From IMG/VR virus record IMGVR_UViG_3300047157_000197, positions 62,001-126,000 of that record: 64,000 nt of DNA; one strand, 5' to 3'. A program made the position numbers and the translations under genes. The notes beneath the pieces are model-generated. The model searched no databases. It saw only the letters and a list, made by a program, of their open reading frames with translations, and was not told where the DNA came from. This document shows positions 8,929-33,194 of this stretch, one piece after another (positions within the stretch are counted from its first letter, which is position 1; every line of letters starts with the position of its first letter).

Positions 8929-11900
8929 ATGGCTATTATTAAAAAATTCGCACCCTTTCAGAACCTATCAAACTTTGAAGTATTTGAAAATGATACTTTA
9001 CCAAATTCTGAATACTTCAAAATCACAGAATTAAAAGAAACATTTACAGGTGGTAAAAATGGGTTTTTAATCGAAGGGTCTGAATATCTAAAAGAAACAT
9101 CAGAAGTAAAAATAGAAATTCTTGATGTTGATGGAAATCCAATATATTTTGAACCAGGTAAAGGTGCACCTGAATATTATGAAGGAAACTCTACTTTAGT
9201 TTCTATTCATGTATATGATGATACTCCAATTGGTATTGGTAAAATTACTATATTAGGAGAATTAAAAAACTTTATTGGCCAAGATGAGGTTTCAACACCA
9301 ATTCCTTTAGATTGGGATGGTATTTACAATGTTAAGTGGGAAAGAGAGATACAGGTAAATAAAAATATTGCAAACGAAACAATTGTAAGATTTTATAAAA
9401 GACCAACTGTAACCATATCAGAAATTGTAAAACCAATATTTAGTAAAACAATAAATGATACAACAGATACTGGTAATGTAAATGGATTCCCACTACAACC
9501 ACCATTGGGTCAAAATTTATCACAATGGAGAGCAGGAACAAATTATTTATTACAAAGAACTTCTGGTACATGGGATGCTGATGTTGATGAAAATGTTATA
9601 TCTATTCCATCACTAAATTATAATTCAACAATTATTGAAGTTTTAAACGATACGGATGTAATAGTTGATATACCCCACACCGATACAAATGGTAATGTTG
9701 CAAAGTTTTCATCAGAAGCATTTTCAGTATCATATCAAGATATAGAAAACGAAACAATAGGAGAAACTTCAATAACAGGTTCTTTTGCTAAGATAGATAT
9801 TAAACAATTAAAAACTTTTGTTGGTGATGTTGCCAGAGTTAAAATATTTAGAAAATCTAGAAATGCTGTTGGTGATTTTTCATTTGTTCAAGAAGCTAAA
9901 TTAGAATCACAAGAATTATTAAGAGATGTAACTACAACAACAGATACAGAAGTTTTTTATGGAAAACTAACAAATGATAATATTTCAAACTATTGGATTA
10001 CTTCAAATAATGACCATCCAATATCAGTAGATTCATCTGTATTATTTAAAGCAGTACATATTGATTATAATAACGATAGTGGAAGTGTTCAACAATTTAT
10101 AACATCTCGTTCACTAGAAATATCAAATGATGTAGAATATACATTAAATTTTAAAACTCTATTAAGTGGTTCAATAGATGATACAAATAAATCTGTAAGA
10201 GCATTTTTCAGCTCATCAGATTTTACACAAGATTTCCTAACAGTAAGTGGTTCGGCAATATATCAATCAAAACAAGATATATCTCAAAACATAATATCAA
10301 CAAATACTGGTAGTGCTAAATTGGTGTTTGAAGTTCAAGGTGATGATTGGTATATTTCAAATATATCTTTAAGAAACGCACAAGATACATCATTCTCACC
10401 AGATGAGTTTACTATTATACAAGATATACCAAGAAAAACAGCAACAGAAACATTTGATTTCAGATTTGAATTTTATGATGTAAATAATAATTTTATACCC
10501 GTCAATGTAGTTGCTACAAAAGAATTTGATGGTGGTAATGATTTTCCAACGAGTGGTAAATTATTCACCTTTGAATCAGATAGAAATGCATTTAGATTTT
10601 CAAGTGGTTCTATTGGAAATCCACCATTCCAACAAATACAATTTAAAACATCACAACAAAACTTAACAGGTTCAGTAACATTCGCATCTTCCGCATTTGA
10701 TGAAGATGGTAATTATATAGACCCAAGTTCTTATGGTGGTGATTATCCTGGTGGTTTAACGAGTATTACTCCCGCAGGTTCTATAATTACAATAGCAAAC
10801 TTTAGTGGTAGTGAAGATGATGTTGTAGTTGGTTCTATTATTTATACTGCATCTTTGGGTTCACTAGAAGAATTTGAAACAGTATATAGATTAGAAGATG
10901 GTGATAATGCACCTCAACTTATAGTAACTTCTAATGCAAATCAATTTATATACGAACCAACAACTCTTTCACCAAAACCAAGTGGACAAAGTATAACCGT
11001 AAGAGCACAGAGAAAAAACTTGGCTTCATTGATAACACCAATTGAAGTAAATAGTGGAAGTAATAGACCACCACTTAATTTTGTAGAAACTGTAAATGGT
11101 ATAGATACCTATACAATATCTGCAACAGATTTTTCAGAATCATTTTCAGCTAATTCTTTTGATGATGTAACTTATTCATTTACTGGTTCAGATGTTTTTG
11201 GAAATGAACAATCAGATGAAATAACTTTATCTAAAGTAATTAACTTTGATGCAGTTTCACTTGTACTTTCAAATGAATCAACATCTTTTCCAGCAAAATC
11301 AACTGGTGAAGTTTTAGGAAATTTAGTACCATCAAGTGGTTCGGTACAAATGTTCATTGGTTCTAATCAAATTACACACGATGATGAGTTGGGTGGTAGA
11401 ACTAAAAATACATTTAATATAACTTCATCTATTGGAGATAATGTAACACCAACAGATACAACACCAAATACCTCAAATTATTCTATATCAGCTTTTGAAA
11501 CAAGTAAAGATAGTGGTTCATTAACACTTACAATAGATTATTTAGCAGGAGATAATTCTACAACACAATCATTTGAAAAGATTGTATCTTATACAAAATC
11601 TAAAAAGGCAGTACCAACTGTTTTAACTAAAATATCTCCATCAACACAAACAATTAATTCAAGTTCAATAGGATATGATGCTCCACAAACAATGGAGGTG
11701 ATAGTACAAGAAGGTGGAGATGAATATACATTTGATACACAATCATTAAGTGGTGGTGGTGATGCACTTGCACAAAAATTTAACATTAATGGTTTATTTG
11801 TAGATTCTGGTTCAATCAGTAATTCAAATACAAAGACATTAACATTTGGTTCACTAACCTCATCTTTCAATAGTATAATAGGTTCTGCATCACTAGATTA

Positions 11901-14313
11901 TGTAGATTCAGAAGGAACATATGTAACTGGTAAAAAAGTAAGATTTGATTTAGCAGTATCTAAAATTGGTGTTGATGGTATAAATGGTGCAAGTGGTTCT
12001 AATGCAAGAGCAGTATCTTTATCTTCAACAAAATATGCAGTAGTATATGATGGTGATGGGGTTTTATTTCCAACATCACAACCATTTACATTAAGTGGTT
12101 CTGCACAAAACTTTTCAAATCCACAATTTCAATTTTTACAAAATGGAAGTGATATATCAGATGGATTTGGTTCAGTATCAGAATTGATAATACCAACTGA
12201 TACAGGTTCATTACCAACTGCAGGTGGAACAAATTTATATGAAGTAAGAGTTAGAGAAACAGGAGGAAGTTGGGATGATTTTAATGTACTTGATAATATC
12301 GATGTATTCGGAGTACAATCGGGTTCAGATGCATTTACAGTATTCTTAACAAATGAAGCTCATGTATTCTCTGCAACATCTGAATCAGTAGTAACAAGTG
12401 ATTTAGAAGATGGAGCATTTGAAGTAAGATTCTTTAGAGGAGCTGAACAATACAACTTTGGTACAACAGGTAAAACATATAGTATATCTGCAACTTCATC
12501 AAATATAGTATTAACACAATCTACAAACAGTAATCAAAGATTATTTACCCCATCATCAATAACTGCAGATAGTGGTAGTGCAACAATTGTAGTAACAGAT
12601 AACAATACAAGTCAAACATTTGATAAAAAATATTCATTTACATTATCCAAAGAAGGATTAGTTGGTGAAAGAGGTGCTGATGGGGCAAATGGAGCAACTG
12701 GTGTTGATGCTAAAGTGGTATCACTATCATCAACGAAATATGCAGTAGTATATGATGGAGATGGAACATTGTTCCCAACAGACCAAGATTTTAATTTATC
12801 TGGTTCTGCACAGAACTTTACAAACCCAGAATTTCAATTCTTAAGTGCGAGTGCAGTATTACACGATTTCGCATCAACATCAGAAGTTACTATTTCAAGT
12901 TCTGGTTATCCTGAAGCAGGAAATGCTACTTTATACGAAGTACGAGTTAGAGAAAATGGTGAATCGTATGATGGTGTATTTGATAACATTGATGTATTTG
13001 GTGTTCAATCAGGTTCAGATTCATTCACAACGTTTTTAACAAATGAAGCTCATGTATTTTCAGCAAACTCAGATGGAGTAGTAACATCTACATTATCAGA
13101 TGGTTCATTTGAAGTAAGATTCTTTAGAGGAGCAGACCAATATGATTTCGGTACAAGTGGTAAAACATATAGTGTTTCGGCTACATCATCAAGTATTGAA
13201 TTAATACAATCAACAAATAGTAATCAACGAAAATTCACACCAAGTTCTGTATCTGCAGATAGTGGAACTGCATCTATTATATTAACTGATAACAATACAG
13301 GACAAACTTTTCCAAAAACTTATACATTTACCAAATCTAAAAAAGGTGCACCTGTAACAACGATTGCAGCATCACCACAATCACAAACAATTACAAGTGG
13401 TAGTGGAGGTATAGGAACACCAACAGATATAACAATAACAGTAAATGAGGGTGGAAGTGATTATGGATATGATACTGGAGGAGCAATACCTGCAAATAAA
13501 TTTAGAATTACTGGTGTAACAAATGCTACAAATAATAATGATGGAACAATTTCACCAGATACTCCAACAAGTTCAACTCCAGTTGTTGGTGATGCTACTA
13601 TTAGTTACACCAATTCAGAGGGAACTGCATTTACAAGTAAAACAATTCCATTTGATGTAGGTGTTGCAGGATTAGGAGATACAGGTGCAGCAGGTTCAGC
13701 GGGTTCTGATTCTTTATCTATAAAATTAACTGCATCTCAATATGCTGTTTTATATAATGGAGAAGGAACTAAAACTGCAGTAGCAATTGTATTAACTGGT
13801 ACTCATCAAAACTTTAGTTCACCCCAATATAGATTTTTAGAAAATGGTACAGAAAGACAAGCATGGAGTACAACAAGTACATATACAATACCAAATTCAC
13901 AAGAAGCAGCTGCAAATACAACTGACCTTTGGAGAGTAGAAGTAAGAGAAGGTGGTAGTGGTACTTATGATGCATTTGATGAAGTAAATATTTATGGATT
14001 AAAACAAGGAACTGATGGTGACCAAGGAGACCCTGGTACTAATGGTGCAGATTCATATACTGTAATTTTAACAAATGAATCACATACACTTCCAACTACA
14101 AACACAGGTACAGTAACTTATACAGGTTCAGGTACATCAATTATTGTTTATAAAGGTTCGACTGAACTTAATAGTGTAACAAGTACACCATCTACAAATG
14201 AATTTAAAGTTACAGTTACATCAGATACTAATATAACAGTAGGTGCACAAACTGTAACTGGTAATCCAGCCGTATTTGCAGTTGCAAGTGCGTGTAATGC
14301 AAATGCTGGCTAA
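8929..14313 (+). CDS. Large tail fibre/baseplate-associated protein, N-terminal part
   Basis: 1794 aa, S/T-rich beta repeats, duplicated ~225-aa units, short collagen G-X-Y linkers; last repeat continues in +1 frame into 14276-16291. Confidence 0.75.
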   Translation: MAIIKKFAPFQNLSNFEVFENDTLPNSEYFKITELKETFTGGKNGFLIEGSEYLKETSEVKIEILDVDGNPIYFEPGKGAPEYYEGNSTLVSIHVYDDTPIGIGKITILGELKNFIGQDEVSTPIPLDWDGIYNVKWEREIQVNKNIANETIVRFYKRPTVTISEIVKPIFSKTINDTTDTGNVNGFPLQPPLGQNLSQWRAGTNYLLQRTSGTWDADVDENVISIPSLNYNSTIIEVLNDTDVIVDIPHTDTNGNVAKFSSEAFSVSYQDIENETIGETSITGSFAKIDIKQLKTFVGDVARVKIFRKSRNAVGDFSFVQEAKLESQELLRDVTTTTDTEVFYGKLTNDNISNYWITSNNDHPISVDSSVLFKAVHIDYNNDSGSVQQFITSRSLEISNDVEYTLNFKTLLSGSIDDTNKSVRAFFSSSDFTQDFLTVSGSAIYQSKQDISQNIISTNTGSAKLVFEVQGDDWYISNISLRNAQDTSFSPDEFTIIQDIPRKTATETFDFRFEFYDVNNNFIPVNVVATKEFDGGNDFPTSGKLFTFESDRNAFRFSSGSIGNPPFQQIQFKTSQQNLTGSVTFASSAFDEDGNYIDPSSYGGDYPGGLTSITPAGSIITIANFSGSEDDVVVGSIIYTASLGSLEEFETVYRLEDGDNAPQLIVTSNANQFIYEPTTLSPKPSGQSITVRAQRKNLASLITPIEVNSGSNRPPLNFVETVNGIDTYTISATDFSESFSANSFDDVTYSFTGSDVFGNEQSDEITLSKVINFDAVSLVLSNESTSFPAKSTGEVLGNLVPSSGSVQMFIGSNQITHDDELGGRTKNTFNITSSIGDNVTPTDTTPNTSNYSISAFETSKDSGSLTLTIDYLAGDNSTTQSFEKIVSYTKSKKAVPTVLTKISPSTQTINSSSIGYDAPQTMEVIVQEGGDEYTFDTQSLSGGGDALAQKFNINGLFVDSGSISNSNTKTLTFGSLTSSFNSIIGSASLDYVDSEGTYVTGKKVRFDLAVSKIGVDGINGASGSNARAVSLSSTKYAVVYDGDGVLFPTSQPFTLSGSAQNFSNPQFQFLQNGSDISDGFGSVSELIIPTDTGSLPTAGGTNLYEVRVRETGGSWDDFNVLDNIDVFGVQSGSDAFTVFLTNEAHVFSATSESVVTSDLEDGAFEVRFFRGAEQYNFGTTGKTYSISATSSNIVLTQSTNSNQRLFTPSSITADSGSATIVVTDNNTSQTFDKKYSFTLSKEGLVGERGADGANGATGVDAKVVSLSSTKYAVVYDGDGTLFPTDQDFNLSGSAQNFTNPEFQFLSASAVLHDFASTSEVTISSSGYPEAGNATLYEVRVRENGESYDGVFDNIDVFGVQSGSDSFTTFLTNEAHVFSANSDGVVTSTLSDGSFEVRFFRGADQYDFGTSGKTYSVSATSSSIELIQSTNSNQRKFTPSSVSADSGTASIILTDNNTGQTFPKTYTFTKSKKGAPVTTIAASPQSQTITSGSGGIGTPTDITITVNEGGSDYGYDTGGAIPANKFRITGVTNATNNNDGTISPDTPTSSTPVVGDATISYTNSEGTAFTSKTIPFDVGVAGLGDTGAAGSAGSDSLSIKLTASQYAVLYNGEGTKTAVAIVLTGTHQNFSSPQYRFLENGTERQAWSTTSTYTIPNSQEAAANTTDLWRVEVREGGSGTYDAFDEVNIYGLKQGTDGDQGDPGTNGADSYTVILTNESHTLPTTNTGTVTYTGSGTSIIVYKGSTELNSVTSTPSTNEFKVTVTSDTNITVGAQTVTGNPAVFAVASACNANAG

Positions 14314-16291
14314 TATTGTATTTAGTGTTAATATCGAAAATGAAGTAACTATTCCTAAAATACAAAGTTTTAGTAAATCAATAGAAGGTGCTGATGGAGA
14401 CCCAGGAGACCCAGGAGACCCAGGAGATAATGGAAGAAGAACTGCAACTGGTATGGTTCATTACAATGCTGCATCCTCTACTGCTCCAACTGGTCCTGAT
14501 GATGGTTCAACTACCTTTACATTTAGTACTGGTGTAATGAGTGGTATGAGAAATGGTTGGCAAATGGGAGCACCAACTTATGCATCTGGTAATAGTAACA
14601 AATATTGGTACGCAACTTTTAGTTCCTTAGAAGAAACAAGTTTAAATGGTACTGCACTTAATAGTAATAATGATTTTGGTTCAGTAACCCAAGCAATTGG
14701 ATTTAGTGGTTTGGTAACATTTACTGGAGGAAATTCTGAATCAATTGATAATGGTTCAGATTACTTAACATTTGGTACTGCAGGTACAACTAAAATTCAT
14801 GGAGATAATATTGCAACAGGTAAAATTATTTCAACAAATTATGTAACTGGTTCTGGTGATGGATTTACTGCAACTGGTTCATTATTTGATTTAGATGAAA
14901 GTACATTGGCAGCTCCAAAATTTAAGATAACAAAGAGTGGTGATGCAGTTTTTCAAGGAACAATTGATGGTGGAAATATAACAATAGGAACTGGAAGTTT
15001 TACAGTAAGTCCCGATGGAGCTGTGAATGCAACCAACGCAACCATACAAGGTAACGTTACTGCTACTGTTGGAACAATTGGTGGATTTGTAATAGGTACT
15101 AATTCATTAACAAATACAGCTGAAACAATACAACTTGTAAGTTCGGCTAATCCAGTTATTAAATTACAAAATAGTTCTAATGAAGATAAATTGGTTCTAA
15201 GTACCGCATCGGGTCTAACTCCTATTGGTACAACATTTACCACTCCTGCAATTGCAAATAATACAACTACTATAAATTCACAAACAACTCTAGCAACTGT
15301 TTCTGGAACAACTGGTGGTGCAACAAATACTAATACAAATCTTAGTAGTGGAACTGCTACAAGATTTCCAAACACTGGTACTTTGGATGCAGCTGCAGAT
15401 GGCCTTTCTGCATCAGGTACAATTACAGTAAATAACTGGACAGGTACCAATCAAGAAATTGCTAGAGTCACTATAACCATGGGGGCTGGTAATTATTTAA
15501 ATTATGCAGCTTTAACATATAGATATGGTATTCAAATATTTAAAAATGGTAGTACATTAATTCAAACAAAATCTACTCCAATAGAAACTGTAACATTTGG
15601 ACCTGGTTCGACTGAATTACAAACAGTACTAAAACATCCTGCTGGTGCTGAAGCCTTTGCATATTCATTTACAGCTGAAGGTGGTGCATATTATGAATTT
15701 AAAACATTTGTTGATTATTTAAATGTTTATGCTGACTTTAATCCAGACCTACTTTTGAATCGTAGTAATACCATTAAAATGAGACTTAATACTCCTAAAA
15801 TAACTGGTCAGGCTACTGCTAATTTAGCATCTGGTGGTAGTGTATCATTTGCAGAGATAAATCAAGGAGGACTTCAAGTAGTAACAACAGCTACTAAACT
15901 TGTAAGAAGTGATTTTAATAGTCTCGATGCATTTTCAGTAACAGGTTCACTTTCAGCAACTGGTAATATTACTGCATTCGCTTCTTCAGATAAAAGGTTA
16001 AAAGATAATATAGAACTTATACAAAATCCTCTTACTAAGGTAAATAAATTAAATGGTGTTACTTTTGATTGGAAAGATGGGTTTGATGATGTTCATGGTT
16101 TCAAAGGAAATGATATTGGGGTAATTGCACAAGATGTAGTACCTATAATACCAGAGATTACAAAATTAAATGAAATTAATGGTTACTATGGGGTAAAATA
16201 CGAAAAACTAACTCCTTTATTAATTGAAGCAGTAAAAGAACTTGCAAATAAAATTGAAAAATTAGAAAACAAATTAAAAGATAAAGAATAA
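14276..16291 (+). CDS. Tail fibre C-terminal part with peptidase S74 intramolecular chaperone
   Basis: GDPGDPGDP linker, SSDKRLKDNI autocleavage motif (~15986) and terminal coiled coil; probably continuous with 8929-14313. Confidence 0.8.
   Translation: MQLQVRVMQMLANIVFSVNIENEVTIPKIQSFSKSIEGADGDPGDPGDPGDNGRRTATGMVHYNAASSTAPTGPDDGSTTFTFSTGVMSGMRNGWQMGAPTYASGNSNKYWYATFSSLEETSLNGTALNSNNDFGSVTQAIGFSGLVTFTGGNSESIDNGSDYLTFGTAGTTKIHGDNIATGKIISTNYVTGSGDGFTATGSLFDLDESTLAAPKFKITKSGDAVFQGTIDGGNITIGTGSFTVSPDGAVNATNATIQGNVTATVGTIGGFVIGTNSLTNTAETIQLVSSANPVIKLQNSSNEDKLVLSTASGLTPIGTTFTTPAIANNTTTINSQTTLATVSGTTGGATNTNTNLSSGTATRFPNTGTLDAAADGLSASGTITVNNWTGTNQEIARVTITMGAGNYLNYAALTYRYGIQIFKNGSTLIQTKSTPIETVTFGPGSTELQTVLKHPAGAEAFAYSFTAEGGAYYEFKTFVDYLNVYADFNPDLLLNRSNTIKMRLNTPKITGQATANLASGGSVSFAEINQGGLQVVTTATKLVRSDFNSLDAFSVTGSLSATGNITAFASSDKRLKDNIELIQNPLTKVNKLNGVTFDWKDGFDDVHGFKGNDIGVIAQDVVPIIPEITKLNEINGYYGVKYEKLTPLLIEAVKELANKIEKLENKLKDKE
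14396..14428 (+). repeat. 9-bp tandem repeat (GGAGACCCA x3 + partial) encoding collagen-like GDP
   Basis: Seen directly. Confidence 0.85.
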
Positions 16292-18804
16292 TGGCATTAC
16301 CAGCATCAGGAGAAATATCAATGTCAATGATTAACCTAGAAATAGGGAATAGTGCAATTACTCAGATAGATTTTGAAGCAATTGCTCTTGAATATAATTT
16401 AGAAGGACCCAATTATAGTGATGGTGTAGCTGGTCTTTCATTGGGCGAATTATATGGATTAAATCCTGCAGCTGGAGATTTTATTTTTTCTGATGCATAT
16501 GGAATACCAAGTAACACAGGTTGGACTATCTATAATTATGGAGCTATTGATTTAAGCCCAACACCAGATGAAGGTACCAATAATACTATTGATGGTCTTA
16601 ATCCATTCACTTGGCGTAGCACAACATATACAAAAGTATTTAGTCCTATTACACGAACGGCAACTGTTGTTGTTGATATTCCCCAATATGATACTTTAAA
16701 TCAAGGATATAATAACTATCCAGGAACAGTAAGTGGTACAATTTCCACAATACAACCAGCGTATAATTTAACAACTGCTGATGTATCTACACAACTTACT
16801 AGTGTACGTTCTCAAACGGGAGAGGTTATTTGGTATGCAGGTAATGATTCAAATGGACCAGGTTCAGTAACTCAAAATTTTACGAAATCAAGTCCAAATA
16901 TAACAACAAATTTACCCGCGGGACAGGTAGGAATATCCGCAACAAATTATGGCATATTATCAACAACAGATAGTGTCCAATCAAGAACAGTAAATTTTTC
17001 AATAGGAGTTCCATCAGGTGCACCAGATGGTGTGAGTGGAAATGAATATGGAAACGTAGGAAGTACTCTTACAAAACCATCTGCTACGGTATCTCAATAT
17101 TCATCTGCTTCAATAGAAGTTGGACTTCAATCAAATGGTAATGTAATCGAGACTGCAGCTGGATTAGGTTCTATGACTTTTGAGTACAATGAATTTGGTT
17201 GGAGTAATAAAAAAAAATTAGATGTAGATATTCTTACCGGCTATAGTCCAAGTACTATGACTTGGGGGATTGCAATATCTGAAGGTAATGTTTCCAACGA
17301 TGGTACGGGTGGAGGTGGACCAGGACCTGGTACGTTTAAAGTTGCTACAGCAGACGCAAACCCTCAGTCGATGTTTTTGTCAGGAACTGGTCCAGTTGCT
17401 TACTACAATTCTAATATTTATGCACACCCAACTACGGAAAATACAACTAGTGCTCAAATTCAACATTACCTTATGTGTACAACAAATAATAATGGTGATT
17501 CACCTGGTGGAATATTTTACATCAATGTAAATCAAAATCCTAATATCACATTTAATACATCTCCCGTATCTAATACTACTATTACACTTGCTAATACGGC
17601 TGATAATTCTAATGTAATACTTGAAACTCCATTAGGATATCAAGCAGAAATTACAGGTAGTGGATTTAGTGTATATGATGGTGATAATGTTCAATCAGCT
17701 ACACCTGGTAATGAAATTACAGGAAATGTATCAGCTCCATCTAATACATTTACAGTTAATGCAACTGCAAATACAGGACCTGCAAGAAGTGGAACATTTA
17801 ATTTATGGGCAACATCATATGATTATCTTATTAAAACATTTATTATTCAACAAGCAGCAGGTCCTCTTAATGAAAAATTATATACGAATATTGGTGGTAG
17901 TTGGTCTCCACTTTTGTTTAGTACGTTCCCATACACAATTCAACAATCAGCAACTAGTCCATTTGCATTCCCAATAACCTCTTTTGGATTTGCACTCAAA
18001 ACAGATTATGTAGAATCATATTCTGTTAGTATAGATAGTGATGATTATTTAGATATTGGATTAACTAGTACAGGTGGTAGTACATCTCTTAGCAACATTG
18101 ATTCACAAACAACTACTCCAAGTTCAGAACAATTTTTTGTAAGTATTGGTGATAGTGGTGGACAATATTCTAATACTGTATTTAGAGAAACAGTAATAAG
18201 TGTTACCTTTGGGTTTGAAACCCATGTAGCATTCTCTCCTCTTACAATAAGATTACAAGGAAGTGGAACAAGTACACCACCTTCACCACCAGGTCCTGGT
18301 GACCCTGGAGTTCCAGATGGGCCATGTTTAATCTATGGAACTCAAGTTTCAATGATAGATGGAACTACAAAAGAAATACAAAACTTAGTAATCGGTGATA
18401 TTGTTAAAAGTATAAACATCGATACAATGCCTGATGGTGAAAGTGAATCACTAAATTGGAGTTCAGATACATTATCATATACATCAGCACAATCTGAGGT
18501 AGTAGGTACTACTGAATATAGTGTTGATACGATATATTCTTTCAACGCAGGATTAATAGAAGCATCAACGGAACATAATCACTTTATAAAAAGAAACAAT
18601 ACACATATGTTCTTGAGTTCTAATAATATTCAAGTAGGAGATTACTTCTTAAATGATGAAAATGTATTTGTAGAAATAACTTCAATAGAACAAAATTCTG
18701 ATTCAAATAACTTTGTTTATAAGATAGATGTTGAATCAAAAGATTTATTCTTTGCAAATGGAATAGTTACTCACAATGCTAAAGGAGGTGCACCTCCAGG
18801 ATAA
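16291..18804 (+). CDS. Tail-fibre-associated/adhesin-like protein with C-terminal Hint domain
   Basis: N-terminal MALPASGEIS...LYG module typical of genes after S74 fibres; Pro-rich linker; Hint 18325-18777 (CLIYGTQV.MIDG...STEH...VYKIDVE...FFANGIVTHN). Confidence 0.75.
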   Translation: MALPASGEISMSMINLEIGNSAITQIDFEAIALEYNLEGPNYSDGVAGLSLGELYGLNPAAGDFIFSDAYGIPSNTGWTIYNYGAIDLSPTPDEGTNNTIDGLNPFTWRSTTYTKVFSPITRTATVVVDIPQYDTLNQGYNNYPGTVSGTISTIQPAYNLTTADVSTQLTSVRSQTGEVIWYAGNDSNGPGSVTQNFTKSSPNITTNLPAGQVGISATNYGILSTTDSVQSRTVNFSIGVPSGAPDGVSGNEYGNVGSTLTKPSATVSQYSSASIEVGLQSNGNVIETAAGLGSMTFEYNEFGWSNKKKLDVDILTGYSPSTMTWGIAISEGNVSNDGTGGGGPGPGTFKVATADANPQSMFLSGTGPVAYYNSNIYAHPTTENTTSAQIQHYLMCTTNNNGDSPGGIFYINVNQNPNITFNTSPVSNTTITLANTADNSNVILETPLGYQAEITGSGFSVYDGDNVQSATPGNEITGNVSAPSNTFTVNATANTGPARSGTFNLWATSYDYLIKTFIIQQAAGPLNEKLYTNIGGSWSPLLFSTFPYTIQQSATSPFAFPITSFGFALKTDYVESYSVSIDSDDYLDIGLTSTGGSTSLSNIDSQTTTPSSEQFFVSIGDSGGQYSNTVFRETVISVTFGFETHVAFSPLTIRLQGSGTSTPPSPPGPGDPGVPDGPCLIYGTQVSMIDGTTKEIQNLVIGDIVKSINIDTMPDGESESLNWSSDTLSYTSAQSEVVGTTEYSVDTIYSFNAGLIEASTEHNHFIKRNNTHMFLSSNNIQVGDYFLNDENVFVEITSIEQNSDSNNFVYKIDVESKDLFFANGIVTHNAKGGAPPG

Positions 18805-18824
18805 CCCATAAAAATACAAATAAA

Positions 18825-18856
18825 TTAGGATATATGAAATAATTTTCGTATATTTA
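18825..18856 (+). promoter_or_regulatory. Bacteroidota-type sigma70 promoter, second copy
   Basis: TTAGGATAT...ATTTTCGTATATTTACA matches 3394-3426, same 20-nt spacer. Confidence 0.6.
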
Positions 18857-18876
18857 CACAAGTAAAGTTATAAAAA

Positions 18877-20067
18877 ATGGCTATATTAAAAAATAAAGAT
18901 AAAGATGATATCAAAAGTGGTATTGTCAATTATTTGTTACATTGTAATGAAACCGTAGATACTAATATTTTAGTAAATAAAATAAATAGTTATTTACCTT
19001 TCGAAGAACGATTAAAAGACCCTAGTATGTTTGAAACTAGTTTAAATATTTTAGTTACTACTGGTGCAGGTAATACAATTCAAGGTGGGGCTGATATATG
19101 GACAAATCATTTTTTAAAATTAATCTGGCCAGAATTGCCAAAAAGAAAAAACTGGAAATTATTAATAGATTCTAAACGACCAACGAACTTTGATACAAAA
19201 TCTTTACCAGAGGGATTAGACTTCCATTTTCATGGAGATGACCCAAGCAAAACAGAAAAGTGGTTATCGGAGTGTATGGGGATTTATTATCTACACTCTC
19301 ATTATCATAAAAGAGAATATATATGGAAATGGGAACGTAAATTTAAAACTATTTTTGTTCATGCATACCCAACAGAAATGGAAGAAGTTATAAATAAAGT
19401 ACCTGAATTAAAAAGATTACAATTTAATACAAAGGTTGATAGTGCATTTTACAATGAGTTTGTACAAAGTTTTAATAAAAGAATTTGGATAGGTAATAAT
19501 CCAAGTAAACTATTAGATGATTTTCCAAACTACACATATACTATACCAAATTTTTATAAATTTAAACATAATATAAGACCAAACGATGAAATTAATAATA
19601 AAATTGGATTTGCATCAAGAGCAGAATCAAGAAAATGTTTGCATTGGGTTCATGGTCATTCAGGCTTTGTTTTAACAGGTAAATATGATTTTGAAAACTT
19701 AAAAGAGAGTACCGGCTACTCATTCCCAGGTGTTAAATTTTATCAATGGAATCCCTCTATTCATGATAAGTTTATGAGAAAAGATTTTGATATATTTCAT
19801 GGAGCTTATTTTAAAGAACCATTTGGTTATTCTATATTTCAAGCAGTTGATTATGGAAAAATTCCAATTATTCATACTGATTGGGCAAAAGAAATAGATT
19901 ACAAATATAGAGCAAGTTCTAAAAATGAATTTGATAAGATGGTTAAAAAAATAATTGGTGATGATAAAAATACACGATTTCAAGAATTTTTTAAGCTAAA
20001 AACTTATATGATGACTTTTGATAATGTAGAAAATTGGTCTACAAAAATATTAGAAAAATTTATTTAA
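18877..20067 (+). CDS. GT-B (GT4-like) glycosyltransferase
   Basis: N-terminal TTGAG...GGA loop; C-terminal EPFGYSIFQAVDYGKIPI motif. Confidence 0.65.
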   Translation: MAILKNKDKDDIKSGIVNYLLHCNETVDTNILVNKINSYLPFEERLKDPSMFETSLNILVTTGAGNTIQGGADIWTNHFLKLIWPELPKRKNWKLLIDSKRPTNFDTKSLPEGLDFHFHGDDPSKTEKWLSECMGIYYLHSHYHKREYIWKWERKFKTIFVHAYPTEMEEVINKVPELKRLQFNTKVDSAFYNEFVQSFNKRIWIGNNPSKLLDDFPNYTYTIPNFYKFKHNIRPNDEINNKIGFASRAESRKCLHWVHGHSGFVLTGKYDFENLKESTGYSFPGVKFYQWNPSIHDKFMRKDFDIFHGAYFKEPFGYSIFQAVDYGKIPIIHTDWAKEIDYKYRASSKNEFDKMVKKIIGDDKNTRFQEFFKLKTYMMTFDNVENWSTKILEKFI

Positions 20068-20094: not shown

Positions 20095-20871
20095 ATGTCT
20101 ATTATTAACTATGTCTTAGTTAAAGAGTTTTTTACAAATAACTTCAAAATAAAAAAAGACACAAACGAAAAAGAGTTCAAAGAATTATCACCTGTTAAAT
20201 ACAGATGGACACATGGTGCAACTGATTTGCATCTTGGAGATGGTTTATTGATATATTCTGCTATCCAATACATGAGAGCAAAAATTTGTGTATGTTTAGG
20301 AAGTGGTGGTGGATTTATTCCAAGAATAATGTCACAAGCAAGAATGGATTTACATGACCAAAAAATATTTGACGGAGAAAAGTTAATGGAATGGGGTAAT
20401 GTAGGAACAACTATTTTAGTAGATGCATCAAATGGAGTTGGGGGATATACTGATTGGATAGAAAAAGATTCATTTTATAGAACACATTTTCCAAGTAGAG
20501 TAATATTAGATACAACAGAAAATGCATATTACAACTTTTTTGTTAAAGAAGATATAAAAATAGATTATCTTCATATAGATGCAGGACATTCATATGATGA
20601 TGTAAAGAAAGATTTTGAATTATACAGTAAAATACTAAACCCTAATGGTATTATATCTATTCATGATACTGATGAATCATTTGAAAAAGAACATATCATT
20701 ACAGATGATATATTAGATGATTTTCATCAAGAATATGCAAATGGACCAGCAAGGTTTGTTAAAGAGTTAAAAGAAAACAAAGAATGGGAAGTTTTTAATT
20801 TTTTTAATAATGGTATATTAAGAGATAAACCTTCTTCTACTGGTTTAACATTTATAAGAAGAAATGCATAA
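20095..20871 (+). CDS. Class I SAM-dependent methyltransferase (Methyltransf_24-like)
   Basis: VCLGSGGGF and IDYLHIDAGHSYDDVKKDF...GIISIHD. Confidence 0.85.
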   Translation: MSIINYVLVKEFFTNNFKIKKDTNEKEFKELSPVKYRWTHGATDLHLGDGLLIYSAIQYMRAKICVCLGSGGGFIPRIMSQARMDLHDQKIFDGEKLMEWGNVGTTILVDASNGVGGYTDWIEKDSFYRTHFPSRVILDTTENAYYNFFVKEDIKIDYLHIDAGHSYDDVKKDFELYSKILNPNGIISIHDTDESFEKEHIITDDILDDFHQEYANGPARFVKELKENKEWEVFNFFNNGILRDKPSSTGLTFIRRNA

Positions 20872-21712
20872 AATAAATTTAGTTACAGTTGTTGGACACA
20901 ACACTACACTTCTACCACATATGATAAATCACTACAAAGATATTGTAGATGAGATTTATGTAGTAGTTTACAGACAACATACCTTAGATGGTATTTTAGA
21001 AGATGTAATTAATCTTGGTATCAAACCTTATAAGATAGTAACTGAAGAAAAATTTAATTGGGAAAGAGTAACTCAATTATATAATGAAGTCAAACAAACC
21101 AAACCAAACGAATGGTGGGTGGTTTCAGATGATGATGAATTTCATATATATCCAAAACCTTTACAAGAAATGATAAATGATTGTGAGGATAATGGGTGGG
21201 AATTTATCACAGGAGGATTCCTCGATAGGATAGGAGAGGAAGGAGAGTTTCCTTTGGTAACAAAAGAAACAAATATTTGGAAATCGTTTCCACTTGCAGG
21301 ATTTTTTAGATATCCGATGAGTGGGGCGATGCCAAACAAATGTTGTGTAATGAAAGGTTCGGTGGATGTAACACCTGGTCAACATTTCGCAGTAATTGGT
21401 GATACTGATACTTGGAGAGAACGAGGGTGGAATCACCCTAAAAGATACCCAATGGGTAGAGGTGAGGGATTTATACAAGTTCATCATTTCAAATGGGATT
21501 CAACCGTTCTTGAAAGATTAAAAGAAGTATCAGAAACAAAAAAAGATTATTCTTATTGGAAAGAATATAAAAAAATGTATAAAGCTATAGAAATAAATGA
21601 TTGGAAAATTGACATTAATAATCCTGAATTTATGTTTGAAAAAATGATTGATAATAATCATTGGGATTATATAAAATGGAATAGATTATTTAAGAAAATA
21701 ATTTCCGTTTAA
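20864..21712 (+). CDS. GT-A glycosyltransferase (GT2/GT92-like)
   Basis: LLPHMINHY, WWVVSDDDEFH (DxD), IQVHHFKW. Confidence 0.7.
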   Translation: MHKINLVTVVGHNTTLLPHMINHYKDIVDEIYVVVYRQHTLDGILEDVINLGIKPYKIVTEEKFNWERVTQLYNEVKQTKPNEWWVVSDDDEFHIYPKPLQEMINDCEDNGWEFITGGFLDRIGEEGEFPLVTKETNIWKSFPLAGFFRYPMSGAMPNKCCVMKGSVDVTPGQHFAVIGDTDTWRERGWNHPKRYPMGRGEGFIQVHHFKWDSTVLERLKEVSETKKDYSYWKEYKKMYKAIEINDWKIDINNPEFMFEKMIDNNHWDYIKWNRLFKKIISV

Positions 21713-21723
21713 TCAATTTCTAT

Positions 21724-21732
21724 ATATTTATA
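21724..21732 (+). promoter_or_regulatory. ATATTTATA putative promoter
   Basis: Intergenic copy. Confidence 0.55.
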
Positions 21733-21766
21733 TATATTAACATTAATAATTAAAAATACAAACGTT

Positions 21767-21949
21767 ATGCCTGCAAAAAAAGATGAAACTGCACAACTTC
21801 TTGAAGAAAGAAAAGTTAAAGCTCTTGAAAAAATAGGGAATTCAATAGATGCACTTACTTTATGGTTTGAAGAAATTGATAAAGAGGAATGGGGACCAAG
21901 AATGGAATGGTACCTATCAGAGTGGTACGAAAACAAAATCAAAAAATAG
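21767..21949 (+). CDS. Small hypothetical protein
   Basis: 60-aa helical ORF after promoter motif. Confidence 0.6.
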   Translation: MPAKKDETAQLLEERKVKALEKIGNSIDALTLWFEEIDKEEWGPRMEWYLSEWYENKIKK

Positions 21950-21952
21950 TAT

Positions 21953-23374
21953 ATGCCTAAACTCGGTATCATTGTTCCATATAGAAACCGAAGAACTCAT
22001 TTAAATCATTTTACTACTGCAATTAAAAACTATTTCAATAATTCAAATATTGATTATGAATTAGTAATAGTTGAACAAGCAGATAAAAAATCATTTAATC
22101 GTGGTGCATTATTAAACATTGGTGTAAAAAAAGCACAAGAATTAGAATGTACTTATGTTGCTTTACATGATGTTGATATGTTACCCGAAGATGTTGATTA
22201 TTCTGATGTAAGAGTTCCAACACACTTAGCAACAAATTTCATTTCAGAAAACAAAGAAATGAAACGAATTGTATTTGATGAGTATTTTGGTGGAGTAACC
22301 CTATTTCCAATAAATGATTACTTTCATGTAAATGGGTATTCTAATAAATATTGGGGATGGGGGTACGAGGATGATGATTTACTTTGGAGATGTAAAGAAA
22401 ATTTTATTGATTTTAACACAAAACAATTACCATCAAAAGCACATAGTAGTACAGCACTAAAATTCAATGGTCATACGAGTCAAGTAACAATTCCAAAACC
22501 ATTTAAATTAAAAAACTATACATTATTTTGCTCATTTAATCCAGCAGAGATTGAGTGTAATGAAGGATATATGTTTGATGAATACAATATTCTTGCTATA
22601 CCAGGTATGGATACTGGATTTACGTTTAATTCATATAAAAGATACAAATTTGAAACTTGGACAGCAGATAAAAGATGTATAAGTTTAAAATCAAATATTT
22701 CATCTCCAAAGCAAACTATATTATGTGCATCAATAAATCAAGATGAAGGTAAAGTAAAATTTTACCAAGATGGTGAACTTGTTGATGAGGCTGAATATGA
22801 GGGAAGAATATTACATTATAATAATGAAAAAAAAATATATTTAGGAAATTCACCATCTCTTGAACATAATAAAAGGAGACCGTTTAAAGGAACAATTGAC
22901 TATTTTGCATTATTTAATCATTCACTAGAACCCACACAGATAAAAGAAATATCTACTAACACAGGTCTTGGATTGACAGAATCATTTGGAGCTTATGTTG
23001 CACCACATACTTTAGAAATGTGTTATGATATGAGAAATTCTAGTCTTTCAACAATCATAGATACCTCACATAGAAAAAAGATAGCAGAAGTGAAAGATTG
23101 TGATAGGGTTTTTGTAAATCAAGTAGCTGATTTTGTTGAAATACCAATACCATATCGTAGAGAAAGTACTTTTAAACTTTTATATCATAAAGAAAATGGA
23201 TTTTATGAAAATAAATGGACATGGACCGAAACAAGAAAAAATCAGCTTTATTTTTATAACAAAGTTTTAAAAGGAAAATCTGATTACAAAAGAGATGGAG
23301 TTGATAATGTAAGATTTGAATTATTATCAGATACAAAAATGGATAATTATTATTTTATATCAGTTGAATTATGA
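21953..23374 (+). CDS. GT7 galactosyltransferase-like enzyme with inserted LamG/ConA domain
   Basis: IIVPYRNR, FNRGALLN, HDVD, YFGGV, YWGWGYEDDDL; LamG insert (FYQDG, IYLG, GTIDYFALFNHSL); GT7 C-tail (YHKENG...YKRDG). Confidence 0.85.
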   Translation: MPKLGIIVPYRNRRTHLNHFTTAIKNYFNNSNIDYELVIVEQADKKSFNRGALLNIGVKKAQELECTYVALHDVDMLPEDVDYSDVRVPTHLATNFISENKEMKRIVFDEYFGGVTLFPINDYFHVNGYSNKYWGWGYEDDDLLWRCKENFIDFNTKQLPSKAHSSTALKFNGHTSQVTIPKPFKLKNYTLFCSFNPAEIECNEGYMFDEYNILAIPGMDTGFTFNSYKRYKFETWTADKRCISLKSNISSPKQTILCASINQDEGKVKFYQDGELVDEAEYEGRILHYNNEKKIYLGNSPSLEHNKRRPFKGTIDYFALFNHSLEPTQIKEISTNTGLGLTESFGAYVAPHTLEMCYDMRNSSLSTIIDTSHRKKIAEVKDCDRVFVNQVADFVEIPIPYRRESTFKLLYHKENGFYENKWTWTETRKNQLYFYNKVLKGKSDYKRDGVDNVRFELLSDTKMDNYYFISVEL

Positions 23375-23784
23375 TAGCAGAAAAATATGATGTAGGTATA
23401 ATTGCTGGAAACTTTGATGTAATACATCCAGGTTATATAAAAATGTTTAAAGAATGTAAATCATATTGTAAACAATTTATAGTTTTATTACATACAGACC
23501 CATCAATAGAAAGACCACATAAACTAAAACCAATTCTCACTAAAGAAGAACGAACTGAAATTTTAACTTCAATAAAGTATATAGATGGAATTGCATATTA
23601 TACTTATGAAAAAGAATTGGTAGATTTGATAGAAAGGTTATCACCCGATATCAGATTTTTAGGAGATGATTATCGTGGTAAAACATATACAGGGTTTGAA
23701 TTAGATGTACCAGTTCATTATTTAAACAGAGACCATGGTTGGAGTACAACTAAATTTAAAAAGTTAATAGCAGATACAATATGA
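23371..23784 (+). CDS. Cytidylyltransferase (TagD/HldE-like HIGH family)
   Basis: GNFDVIHPGY, GDDY, WSTT motifs. Confidence 0.85.
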   Translation: MIAEKYDVGIIAGNFDVIHPGYIKMFKECKSYCKQFIVLLHTDPSIERPHKLKPILTKEERTEILTSIKYIDGIAYYTYEKELVDLIERLSPDIRFLGDDYRGKTYTGFELDVPVHYLNRDHGWSTTKFKKLIADTI

Positions 23785-25250: not shown

Positions 25251-25275
25251 TATATATTAATATACAAGAAATTCA

Positions 25276-27455: not shown

Positions 27456-27460
27456 CTCAA

Positions 27461-33188: not shown

Positions 33189-33194
33189 AAAGTT

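What the first reader, a model, noticed from the sequence alone, without database searches (positions are those of the whole stretch)
16291..18804. Cleavage-only Hint domain at the C-terminus of a fibre-tip protein
Residues 679-829 form a mini Hint domain (Cys1 in P/CLIYGT, SxxH block B, terminal THN) without an endonuclease. The +1 residue is Ala and only AKGGAPPG follows, so splicing is not possible. As in Hedgehog or bacterial intein-like domains, the N-S shift would leave the ~678-aa N-terminal protein as a reactive thioester. Inference: autoprocessing chaperone, or covalent coupling of the adhesin to another virion protein, a glycan or the host surface. It follows a fibre that already has an S74 autocleaving chaperone, and precedes the glycan cluster.
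Basis: partly seen in the sequence, partly recalled or inferred. Interest (0 to 1): 0.6.

Follow-up and report, generated by a model that had tools for sequence, protein, structure and literature searches.

The report
Self-removing Hint domain on phage adhesin
A large marine phage ends one of its surface-fibre-like proteins with a small intein-like "Hint" domain that most likely cuts itself off after translation, and it belongs to a large, undescribed group of such domains that sit at the ends of phage surface proteins and always carry a nearby lysine.

Summary
ORF 16291-18804 (837 aa) ends in a complete 151-residue Hint domain: Cys679, block B S759-x-x-H762, H828-N829, then Ala830 and an 8-residue tail. 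An AlphaFold model has pLDDT 93.9. Its closest solved relatives are BIL-type Hint domains (Tetrahymena BUBL BIL2, C. thermocellum BIL), ahead of true inteins and Hedgehog.

The domain is one of at least 882 protein clusters. Nearly all place this Hint at the extreme C-terminus of phage adhesin-like proteins, with Cys1, terminal His-Asn, almost never a +1 nucleophile, and a tail of median 6 residues. 126 of 131 short tails contain a Lys; 23 to 77 are expected by chance.

Orthologues without the Hint stop at the same Pro/Gly linker. The body is a hypervariable cassette, and nucleotide identity jumps from 45% to 98% at the Cys679 codon. The Hint is under purifying selection (dN/dS about 0.18).

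Best reading: a self-excising BIL-A-like module that leaves a mature protein of about 678 aa. "Splicing is not possible" is overstated, because type A BILs can ligate without a +1 nucleophile and BIL2 forms Lys isopeptides. "Fibre-tip" is not shown. No cleavage chemistry could be tested here. I rate it a new variant of a known kind, of moderate interest.

The parts
16291..18804 (+). Whole gene: 837-aa precursor (P0001). Its ATG overlaps the stop codon of the upstream fibre ORF by one base, an arrangement kept in relatives.
   Evidence: the same one-base overlap is seen in L005-L008
16291..16346 (+). Conserved N-terminal motif MALPASGxISMSMIN.E(L/I)G. It forms the 5' conserved edge of the variable cassette.
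   Evidence: alignment A1; nucleotide homology to L006/L005 ends at 16346; the same motif heads another Hint-bearing protein, P0045
16347..18276 (+). Hypervariable Thr/Ser/Gly/Asn-rich all-beta body. It is probably tandem Ig/BACON-like beta-sandwich domains and is the presumed functional adhesin part.
   Evidence: 37-63% nucleotide identity to relatives against 80-98% in the flanks; weak BACON hit at residues 479-521; Atlas neighbours are viral BACON clusters; Foldseek gives pilin, adhesin and cadherin-like strings on a low-confidence model; composition
18277..18324 (+). Pro/Gly-rich linker PPSPPGPGDPGVPDGP (residues 663-678), ending in Pro678 at the -1 position. Hint-less orthologues stop within this linker.
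18325..18777 (+). BIL-type Hint domain, residues 679-829.
18325..18327 (+). Cys679, the predicted nucleophile for the N-to-S acyl shift at Pro678-Cys679.
   Evidence: Cys is the first residue in 137 of 142 family domains
18565..18576 (+). Block B S759-T-E-H762. His762 aligns with the catalytic H69 of BIL2.
   Evidence: His at 90% or more in the family; PMC8616854 for the role of H69
18772..18777 (+). His828-Asn829, the terminal block G dipeptide and predicted site of Asn cyclisation.
   Evidence: HN present in 165 of 167 family domains; TIGR01443 hit
18778..18801 (+). Eight-residue tail AKGGAPPG. Ala830 is the +1 residue (not a nucleophile). Lys831 at +2 (18781-18783) is the family-wide conserved lysine.
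14276..16291 (+). Context: C-terminal part of the giant upstream fibre gene, with the Peptidase_S74 intramolecular chaperone domain at about 15986-16159.
18877..20067 (+). Context: syntenic 396-aa ORF of unknown function that always follows the gene, including in the Hint-less locus L008.
20095..21712 (+). Context: start of the glycan-modification cluster (Methyltransf_24, GT2-like), which continues with GT7-LamG fusions, a cytidylyltransferase and a radical SAM enzyme.

Best explanation
The gene encodes an 837-aa precursor of a surface (adhesin or fibre-accessory) protein of a 276-kb marine T4-like jumbo myophage. The last 159 residues are a self-contained autoprocessing module: a 151-aa BIL-type (type-A-like) Hint domain plus a minimal Lys-bearing tail.

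Proposed mechanism, all steps inferred:
1. After folding, Cys679 attacks the Pro678 carbonyl (N-to-S acyl shift, assisted by His762). The 678-aa body then hangs on the Hint as a thioester.
2. Because +1 is Ala, the canonical intein trans-esterification cannot occur. The thioester is resolved by water or a thiol (plain N-terminal cleavage) or by an amine of the tail. That amine could be the epsilon-amine of Lys831, or the alpha-amine of Ala830 once it is freed.
3. Asn829 cyclises and detaches the tail from the Hint.

Net result: the Hint is discarded, and the mature protein is residues 1-678 with a free C-terminus or a tiny amide-linked tail. This matches the natural Hint-less orthologues that end in the same Pro/Gly linker. 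Before removal, the Hint plausibly acts as a folding, assembly or timing module, in the way the S74 chaperone serves the neighbouring fibre. At DNA level, the Hint and the first ~18 codons form the conserved edges between which the variable body is swapped among related phages.
For: Shown by tools:
- Hint fold at high confidence, with BIL domains as closest relatives.
- Cys1, block B His and terminal His-Asn are conserved across 149 cluster representatives that are only 30-50% identical to this domain.
- Purifying selection on the Hint in recent divergence: dN 0.034-0.056 against dS 0.19-0.29, so omega is about 0.18-0.20.
- Placement at the very C-terminus, with a median tail of 6 aa, in proteins of 150-1763 aa. 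The N-terminal parts carry BACON, fn3, PKD, collagen, VWA and GP38 modules. Their contigs are phage-like, with gp32, UvsW and terminase genes.
- Orthologues P0012-P0017 lack the Hint and the tail, stop in the same linker, and keep the same synteny.
- Sharp mosaic boundary at the Cys679 codon: homology to L006 resumes at 18322, and identity jumps from 45% to 98%.
- Lys is present in 126 of 131 short tails, against 23-77 expected for Lys backgrounds of 3-15%. Arg is present in only 21.

From the literature:
- Type A BILs have His-Asn, lack the +1 nucleophile, mainly cleave, and can ligate by aminolysis (PMC4031507).
- BIL2 forms Lys isopeptides (PMC8616854).
Against: - No biochemical, proteomic or read-level evidence of cleavage exists for this protein or any family member.
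- The -1 residue here is Pro678. From my memory of intein expression work, not tested here, Pro at -1 can strongly slow the N-S acyl shift. Most family members have Gly at -1, and only 10 of 142 have Pro.
- Block F lacks the Asp and His of class 1 inteins (VYKIDVESKD), so the catalytic details may differ.
- Strict conservation of His-Asn plus Lys is not needed for plain Hedgehog-style cleavage. The simple 'cut and discard' version is therefore incomplete.
- Tandem arrays of these Hints with 1-6-residue linkers are hard to explain by a single removal step.
- Natural Hint-less orthologues show the module is dispensable, so a chaperone role is not obligatory.
- The full-length model is poor (pLDDT 51), so the nature of the body is only a lead.
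Confidence: 0.6

Rival explanations
1. Lys-directed isopeptide 'splicing'. The conserved tail lysine (Lys831) acts as the built-in nucleophile in place of the missing +1 Cys/Ser/Thr. Its epsilon-amine attacks the Cys679 thioester to give a branched amide intermediate. Asn829 cyclisation then releases the Hint and leaves the body capped by an isopeptide-linked AKGGAPPG. This refines the best explanation rather than replacing it.
For: - Lys is at +1 or +2 in 124 of 166 domains and somewhere in 126 of 131 short tails. Arg is rare.
- His-Asn is conserved in 165 of 167 domains although the tail is only 1-10 aa. That makes sense only if C-terminal junction chemistry matters.
- The closest solved relative, BIL2, forms a Lys(epsilon)-to-C-terminus isopeptide (PMC8616854).
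- The internal Hint of the 439-aa protein in the same genome has an invariant +1 Lys followed by a real FN3-like C-extein.
Against: - This is purely sequence statistics, and the cluster representatives are not phylogenetically independent.
- Lys could instead be structural or electrostatic, for example pairing with block F acidic residues.
- No model coordinates were available, so the Lys-to-carbonyl geometry could not be measured, and the tail has low pLDDT.
- A branched 8-residue cap has no obvious benefit.
Confidence: 0.25
2. Thioester-driven covalent coupling in trans. The activated Pro678 carbonyl is transferred to a nucleophile on another molecule: a lysine of a virion protein such as the neighbouring fibre, a glycan made by the adjacent cluster, or a host surface group. 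This would resemble Hedgehog cholesterolysis or BUBL conjugation.
For: - The Hint chemistry allows it.
- BIL2 conjugates its N-extein to lysines of other proteins (PMC8616854).
- The gene sits between a fibre gene and a large glycan-modification cluster.
Against: - There is no adduct-recognition region after the Hint, unlike Hedgehog.
- The conserved nucleophile candidate (Lys) lies in cis.
- Hint-less orthologues with the same synteny function without any activated C-terminus.
- The family occurs on very diverse N-terminal proteins. This argues against one specific acceptor.
Confidence: 0.1
3. A largely selfish or neutral intein-derived add-on. A Hint-plus-tail cassette propagates by recombination onto the 3' ends of phage surface-protein genes and removes itself harmlessly, without giving the phage a benefit.
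For: - Sporadic presence and absence among orthologues.
- The Hint DNA is far more conserved than the adjoining body, with a breakpoint exactly at its 5' edge.
- Tandem arrays resemble repeated insertion.
- The same domain appears on unrelated N-terminal proteins.
Against: - No homing endonuclease lies in or beside it.
- Flanking genes are similarly conserved (80-99%), so the contrast mainly reflects a hypervariable body.
- In the 439-aa tail-sheath-adjacent protein, the Hint is kept in all 120 listed homologues, of more than 645 clusters. That is the pattern of an integrated functional part.
- The three Hint-bearing genes of this genome share only 26-35% identity, so they are not recent copies.
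Confidence: 0.12
4. The Hint is not cleaved and stays on the virion as a structural or binding domain, as a catalytically silent relic.
For: - Pro at -1 may hinder the acyl shift (my memory of intein work, untested).
- Block F lacks the usual Asp and His.
- Tandem arrays could be structural.
Against: Near-universal retention of exactly the catalytic residues (Cys1, block B His, His-Asn) across hundreds of divergent clusters, while surface positions vary. Purifying selection.
Confidence: 0.06
5. A canonical class 1 mini-intein that splices the body to the C-terminal octapeptide.
For: Weak Pfam and TIGRFAM intein hits, and a His-Asn terminus.
Against: - The +1 residue is Ala. In the family, +1 is Ser in only 6-9 cases and never Cys or Thr.
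- Hint-less orthologues lack the 'C-extein' as well, so the Hint does not interrupt a host sequence.
- BIL domains score 5-9 orders of magnitude better than inteins.
Confidence: 0.02

Closest known systems
BIL2 domain of the Tetrahymena thermophila BUBL1 polyubiquitin-like locus (PDB 6Y75/6TMM)
   Same: It is the best sequence and structure match: phmmer 5e-6, profile 2.5e-17, Foldseek 1.4e-10 with TM 0.75-0.82. Both have Cys1, a block B His (H69 aligns with His762), terminal His-Asn and no canonical +1 nucleophile. BIL2 resolves its thioester with a lysine amine (PMC8616854), and the phage family carries a conserved Lys.
   Different: BIL2 is eukaryotic and flanked by ubiquitin-like domains. 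Here the N-flank is a 678-aa phage adhesin-like body and the C-flank is 8 residues. Identity is only about 23%. The phage clade has an extra insert (about residues 713-735, with a conserved Trp-Ser). Block F residues differ.
Type A bacterial intein-like (BIL) domains, e.g. the Clostridium thermocellum BIL (PDB 2LWY)
   Same: Hint fold, N-terminal Cys, C-terminal His-Asn, no +1 nucleophile, no endonuclease, and residence in variable, non-housekeeping proteins. It is the second-best PDB match (profile 1.2e-14; Foldseek 2e-8). The described chemistry is N- and C-terminal cleavage with minor ligation by aminolysis (PMC4031507).
   Different: Those domains were described in bacterial proteins, usually internal. 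This clade is phage-borne, almost always at the extreme C-terminus, with a 1-10-residue tail and a near-universal Lys. I did not find these features described in the searchable literature.
Hedgehog/Hog C-terminal autoprocessing domain (PDB 1AT0)
   Same: A C-terminally placed Hint that releases an N-terminal functional protein through a Cys thioester. The fold matches (Foldseek 3.5e-5).
   Different: Hedgehog has a sterol/adduct-recognition region after the Hint and lacks the terminal His-Asn. Here the Hint ends in His-Asn plus a Lys tail, and nothing that could recruit an adduct follows.
Peptidase S74 intramolecular chaperone domain of phage fibres and endosialidases
   Same: A C-terminal, self-cleaving, discarded module on phage fibre proteins. 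One is encoded by the gene immediately upstream.
   Different: The fold and chemistry are unrelated (a Ser-Lys dyad protease that drives trimer folding). P0001 has no S74 match. A chaperone function for the Hint is only an analogy.
Pretoxin HINT (PT-HINT, PF07591) of polymorphic toxins and umbrella toxin UmbC (PDB 8W20)
   Same: A Hint used as a releasing peptidase in modular, recombining surface or secreted proteins (PMC3482391). 8W20 is hit at 3.4e-9 by the family profile.
   Different: PT-HINT precedes a C-terminal toxin cassette. Here nothing but 8 residues follows, and it is the N-terminal part that varies.
Phage NCTB 'large intein domain protein' BN7874_132 (LT598654.1) and UniProt 'Hint domain containing protein [uncultured Caudovirales phage]'
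   Same: Same clade and architecture. The NCTB protein is 1304 aa, lies in a tail-fibre cluster, and ends GGG|CVAL...LVHN|APVDQKH. BFVD models match with TM 0.85-0.90.
   Different: These carry automatic annotations only. I found no functional or comparative description. Identity to P0001 is about 26%.

Membership tests
HINT superfamily (Hedgehog/intein fold) | Horseshoe-like all-beta Hint fold | tested here: met
   AlphaFold model pLDDT 93.9. All 65 Foldseek PDB hits with E <= 0.001 that were listed are Hint domains; the top TM is 0.75-0.84.
Type A BIL domain | N-terminal Cys (or Ser) nucleophile and block B His | tested here: met
   Cys679 and S759-x-x-H762. In the family, Cys1 occurs in 137 of 142 domains and the block B His in at least 90%.
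Type A BIL domain | C-terminal His-Asn as in inteins | tested here: met
   H828-N829. HN occurs in 165 of 167 family domains. The definition is taken from PMC4031507.
Type A BIL domain | No nucleophilic residue at the C'-flank (+1) | tested here: met
   +1 is Ala830. In the family, +1 is K, A, I, V, L, F, R or D, with Ser in only 6-9 cases and no Cys or Thr.
Type A BIL domain | Closer to known BILs than to inteins or Hedgehog | tested here: met
   The family profile scores BIL2 at 2.5e-17 and 2LWY at 1.2e-14, against 1.7e-8 or weaker for inteins. Foldseek gives the same order.
Type A BIL domain | Autocatalytic N- and C-terminal cleavage, with minor ligation | not testable with these tools
   This needs expression and mass spectrometry.
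Class 1 intein | Cys/Ser/Thr at +1 for trans-esterification | tested here: not met
   Ala830.
Class 1 intein | Interrupts a host protein whose intein-less alleles have contiguous exteins; often carries a homing endonuclease | tested here: not met
   Hint-less orthologues stop at the junction and lack the AK... tail. The 151-aa domain has no endonuclease insert.
Hedgehog/Hog autoprocessing domain | Hint followed by an adduct (sterol) recognition region; no terminal His-Asn requirement | tested here: not met
   Only 8 residues follow the Hint, and HN is conserved. PF01079 does not hit P0001.
Pretoxin HINT (PF07591) | Hint immediately upstream of a C-terminal toxin domain | tested here: not met
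   There is no domain after the Hint, and no PF07591 hit for P0001.
Peptidase S74 intramolecular chaperone | S74 Ser-Lys autoprotease domain at the C-terminus | tested here: not met
   P0001 has no PF13884 match. The domain is in the upstream ORF instead.
BUBL-type isopeptide-forming BIL | Thioester resolved by a lysine epsilon-amine | tested here: inconclusive
   A conserved Lys sits at +1 or +2, and 126 of 131 short tails contain Lys. This is consistent with the feature, but the chemistry is untested and no flanking ubiquitin-like domains exist.
Phage tail-fibre tip / receptor-binding protein | Recognisable fibre or RBP domain, or demonstrated virion location | tested here: inconclusive
   There is no PHROG and no fibre Pfam hit. 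The supporting points are position after a fibre gene, hypervariability, BACON/Ig-like leads and fibre-like composition.

The most novel reading that the evidence does not exclude
This is the type example of a phage-specific Hint clade in which a lysine in a minimal C-terminal tail replaces the intein +1 nucleophile. The domain would then perform amide (isopeptide) 'splicing' or Lys-directed conjugation during virion assembly. That would be a naturally occurring, ATP-independent, self-contained protein-ligation chemistry, used widely by marine and freshwater tailed phages on their adhesins and on a conserved tail-associated protein.
Probability: 0.22. Interest if true: 0.8.

Novelty: new variant of a known kind. 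Interest (0 to 1): 0.58.

Why it matters
Hint domains are known as inteins, Hedgehog processing domains and bacterial BILs. A role in building phage particles has not been described in the literature I could search.

Here a single gene leads to a family of at least 882 clusters in which surface proteins of tailed phages end in a catalytically intact BIL-like Hint with a conserved lysine. If these domains self-excise, they are a second, chemically different counterpart to the S74 self-cleaving chaperone. They would matter for annotating, expressing and engineering phage receptor-binding proteins, because the mature protein differs from the ORF.

If the lysine is the nucleophile, the family would offer compact natural modules of about 150 aa for isopeptide ligation, and would extend the BUBL mechanism from ciliates to viruses.

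The sharp mosaic boundary at the Hint also suggests that the discarded domain doubles as a conserved recombination handle for swapping host-range cassettes.

Tried and rejected
- Nucleotide search of the phage collection with 14000-20000 found nothing.
- tblastn of P0001 found only Phage NCTB.
- PHROGs gave no family for P0001.
- Full-length AlphaFold (18-sequence alignment) was poor, with pLDDT 51. Its Foldseek hits are generic Ig-like strings and are used only as a lead.
- The Atlas feature search scored 0.78-0.79, below the level that counts as evidence.
- A canonical intein was rejected (+1 Ala; Hint-less orthologues lack the tail). Hedgehog, PT-HINT and S74 memberships were rejected (see the membership test).
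- 'Recent horizontal spread of the Hint' was considered as the explanation for its high DNA identity. It was rejected as the main explanation because flanking genes are similarly conserved. The contrast mainly reflects a hypervariable body.
- I looked for Hint-less homologues of the 439-aa internal-Hint protein, to see whether its exteins are contiguous elsewhere. None appeared among the best 120, and the two short hits are N-terminally truncated.
- Searching the genome for the N-terminal MALPASG motif in other ORFs found only P0001.
- Literature searches for BIL or Hint domains in phage fibres or virions found nothing relevant.
- Model coordinates are not exposed, so the Lys831-to-Pro678 carbonyl geometry could not be measured.
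- Complex prediction, the look-up of sequencing runs and read laying were not used. No binding claim is made, and reads cannot show protein processing.

Full report
**Setting**

The window is bases 62001-126000 of a 275,970-bp IMG/VR virus record. It has about 30% G+C, and all genes are on the + strand. Gene content marks a T4-like jumbo myophage:
- DNA primase, a fused SbcD-SbcC nuclease and a SegE-like GIY-YIG endonuclease.
- A tail sheath gene elsewhere in the genome.

Related contigs come from marine metagenomes, including Tara Oceans.

**1. The observation**

ORF 16291-18804 is open and encodes 837 aa. Its ATG overlaps the stop codon of the upstream fibre ORF by one base, and relatives keep this arrangement.

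- Cys679 (GP|CLIYGT).
- Block B S759-T-E-H762.
- Blocks F/G VYKIDVES...ANGIVTHN, ending in H828-N829.
- Then Ala830, Lys831 and six more residues.

Library matches are weak. Pfam Intein_splicing gives E 5.5e-6, below its gathering score. TIGR01443 scores just above its cutoff. Independent evidence is strong:
- phmmer aligns the whole domain with the BIL2 Hint of Tetrahymena (E 5e-6).
- An exhaustive HMMER search finds 882 clusters at E <= 1e-3 and 293 at E <= 1e-10.
- An AlphaFold model built on 45 diverse homologues has pLDDT 93.9.
- Foldseek returns only Hint folds. The order is BIL2 (6Y75, E 1.4e-10, TM 0.75-0.82), the C. thermocellum BIL (2LWY), mini-inteins, then Hedgehog 1AT0.
- A profile of the family ranks PDB sequences the same way: BIL2 2.5e-17, 2LWY 1.2e-14, inteins 1e-8 or weaker.

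The stated context also holds: an S74-bearing fibre gene lies upstream and a glycan cluster lies downstream.

**2. What the protein is**

The 678-aa body is 43% Thr/Ser/Gly/Asn, with 1.5% Lys and one Cys. It is predicted to be all-beta. It has only a weak BACON hit, and its Atlas neighbours are viral BACON clusters (a lead only). The low-confidence full-length model resembles strings of Ig-like domains, as in pilins and adhesins.

"Fibre-tip" is therefore not shown. "Adhesin-like surface protein encoded next to a fibre" is as far as the data go.

**3. The orthologue comparison**

This comparison is the most informative for this gene.
- Nine full-length relatives share a body only 40-86% identical, but a Hint 92-95% identical.
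- Six further relatives (642-644 aa) have the same body and the same synteny. They end in the Gly/Pro linker exactly where the Hint would begin, and they lack the AK... tail too.
- More distant members (P0018, P0019) keep ELG|CL(V/L)QGT...THN|AKIEF.

At DNA level:
- The body is 48-63% identical between the window and loci L006/L007, with dS 0.7-1.0.
- The Hint is 91-94% identical, with dS 0.19-0.29 and dN 0.03-0.06.
- Flanking genes are also 80-99% identical. The anomaly is therefore a hypervariable body, not an unusually young Hint.
- Against L006, homology resumes at 18322, three bases before the Cys679 codon, and identity jumps from 45% to 98%.

From this I infer three things. The Hint-plus-tail is an add-on module, not an interruption of a host sequence. 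It is under purifying selection (omega about 0.18). Together with the first ~18 codons, it frames a cassette that is exchanged among related phages.

**4. The family**

Among the best 150 representatives, the Hint almost always ends 1-10 residues before the stop codon, in proteins of 150-1763 aa. The median tail is 6 aa, and 107 of 144 tails are 10 aa or shorter.

Conserved features:
- Cys is the first residue in 137 of 142 domains.
- His-Asn is the terminus in 165 of 167.
- The +1 residue is K, A, I, V, L, F, R or D, with Ser in only 6-9 cases and never Cys or Thr.

- Lys is at +2 in 85 and at +1 in 39 of 166 domains.
- 126 of 131 short tails contain a Lys, against 23 expected from body composition and 77 even with a 15% Lys background. 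The maximum in 20,000 simulations was 97.
- Arg occurs in only 21 tails.

The N-terminal partners are BACON, fn3, PKD, collagen, VWA, DUF5977 and GP38 modules. The sampled contigs are phage-like.

The same architecture is present in the complete genome of Phage NCTB. There it is annotated as 'large intein domain protein' inside a tail-fibre cluster and ends LVHN|APVDQKH. It also appears in UniProt 'Hint domain containing protein [uncultured Caudovirales phage]' entries, which match with TM 0.85-0.90.

The genome under study has two more carriers:
- A 764-aa ORF ending in three tandem Hints.
- A 439-aa ORF next to the tail sheath gene, with an internal Hint, an invariant +1 Lys and an FN3-like C-extein. 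All 120 listed homologues, of more than 645 clusters, retain the Hint.

**5. Mechanism**

Shown here: the fold, the catalytic signature, its conservation and purifying selection, the terminal placement, and the natural Hint-less form.

Inferred:
1. An N-to-S acyl shift occurs at Pro678-Cys679.
2. The thioester is resolved without the canonical trans-esterification, because +1 is Ala.
3. Asn829 cyclises.
4. The Hint is released, leaving a mature protein of about 678 aa.

Type A BILs share exactly these features. They mostly cleave but can ligate their flanks by aminolysis (PMC4031507). BIL2, the closest solved relative, forms a Lys isopeptide (PMC8616854). "Splicing is not possible" is therefore too strong.

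The joint conservation of His-Asn and a tail Lys, on tails too short to have a function of their own, is best explained if the C-terminal junction takes part in resolving the thioester. I rate Lys-directed amide formation as a serious refinement (about 0.25), but it is unproven.

What the Hint is for before removal is unknown. It could be a folding or assembly aid, a timing device, a recombination handle, or nothing. The S74 analogy is only an analogy.

Caveats:
- Pro at -1 may slow the first step (my memory of intein work, untested).
- Block F lacks the class 1 Asp and His.
- Tandem arrays remain unexplained.

**6. Comparison and novelty**

The domain passes every sequence and structure test for a type-A-like BIL. 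It fails the defining tests for class 1 inteins, Hedgehog, PT-HINT and S74 (see the membership table).

Literature searches for BIL or Hint domains in phage fibres or virions returned nothing relevant. Subscription papers, such as the original BIL papers, are not in the library. From memory, a C-type BIL exists in Bdellovibrio.

I rate it a new variant of a known kind: a phage-borne, C-terminal, Lys-tailed BIL clade. Interest is moderate (0.58). The chemistry is plausible and easily tested, and the family is large, but nothing here shows activity.

**Limits**

Noticed in passing
window 8929-16291 (frame change at about 14305-14313): ORFs 8929-14313 (1794 aa) and 14276-16291 (671 aa, S74 end) align end to end with a single 2675-aa protein of relative L007 (its residues 2007 then 2009). 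In this genome the giant fibre gene is therefore split by a one-base frame change. It could be an assembly error, a real mutation or a programmed shift.
   Followed up: partly
L002:970-2289 (G000:C1:147044-148363, outside the window): A 439-aa protein just upstream of the tail sheath gene carries an internal Hint of the same clade (ALC|L...YITHN|KGGNSHTD), followed by an FN3-like domain. More than 645 clusters of full-length homologues exist, and all 120 listed keep the Hint with an invariant +1 Lys. It looks like an integral part of a conserved tail-associated protein.
   Followed up: partly
L003:1-1926 (G000:C1:20727-23021, outside the window): A 764-aa ORF ends in three tandem Hint domains joined by 2-6-residue linkers (...IVHN|AP|CFIAGT..., ...AHN|RESLPC|CFIAGT..., ...VVHN|K stop). 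Similar tandem arrays occur in metagenomic relatives (P0034, P0041, P0103, P0115, P0127, P0150, P0166). Their purpose is unexplained.
   Followed up: no
L012 (Phage NCTB, LT598654.1 91440-101901): A complete 258-kb phage genome has a 1304-aa 'large intein domain protein' with the same C-terminal Hint, plus at least one more 'intein domain protein', inside a tail-fibre gene cluster. This is a possible experimental entry point if the phage or a relative is cultivable.
   Followed up: partly
window 20095-36179: A long glycan-modification cluster follows: Methyltransf_24, a GT2-like enzyme, at least two GT7 (galactosyltransferase-like) plus Laminin_G_3 fusions, a cytidylyltransferase, a radical SAM enzyme and further ORFs. 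It is conserved in relatives L005-L007. A sulfotransferase lies at 2389-2970.
   Followed up: no
window 5539-8697: A single 1052-aa ORF combines a Metallophos (SbcD/gp47-like) domain and an AAA_23/SMC (SbcC/gp46-like) domain, which are normally two proteins. The same fusion appears in L008.
   Followed up: no
window 36306-41513: A 1735-aa ORF combines a cytidyltransferase-like N-terminus with a tRNA nucleotidyltransferase (CCA-adding-like) region at residues ~950-1240. This is an unusual giant fusion.
   Followed up: no
window 16291-16346 and P0045: The N-terminal motif MALP(A/S)SG.(I/L)SMS.I..E.G recurs on an unrelated short Hint-bearing protein (P0045). A looser form heads the 439-aa protein (MAISAGETLSLNNLAGATGN). 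It may be a shared virion-attachment or assembly signal.
   Followed up: partly
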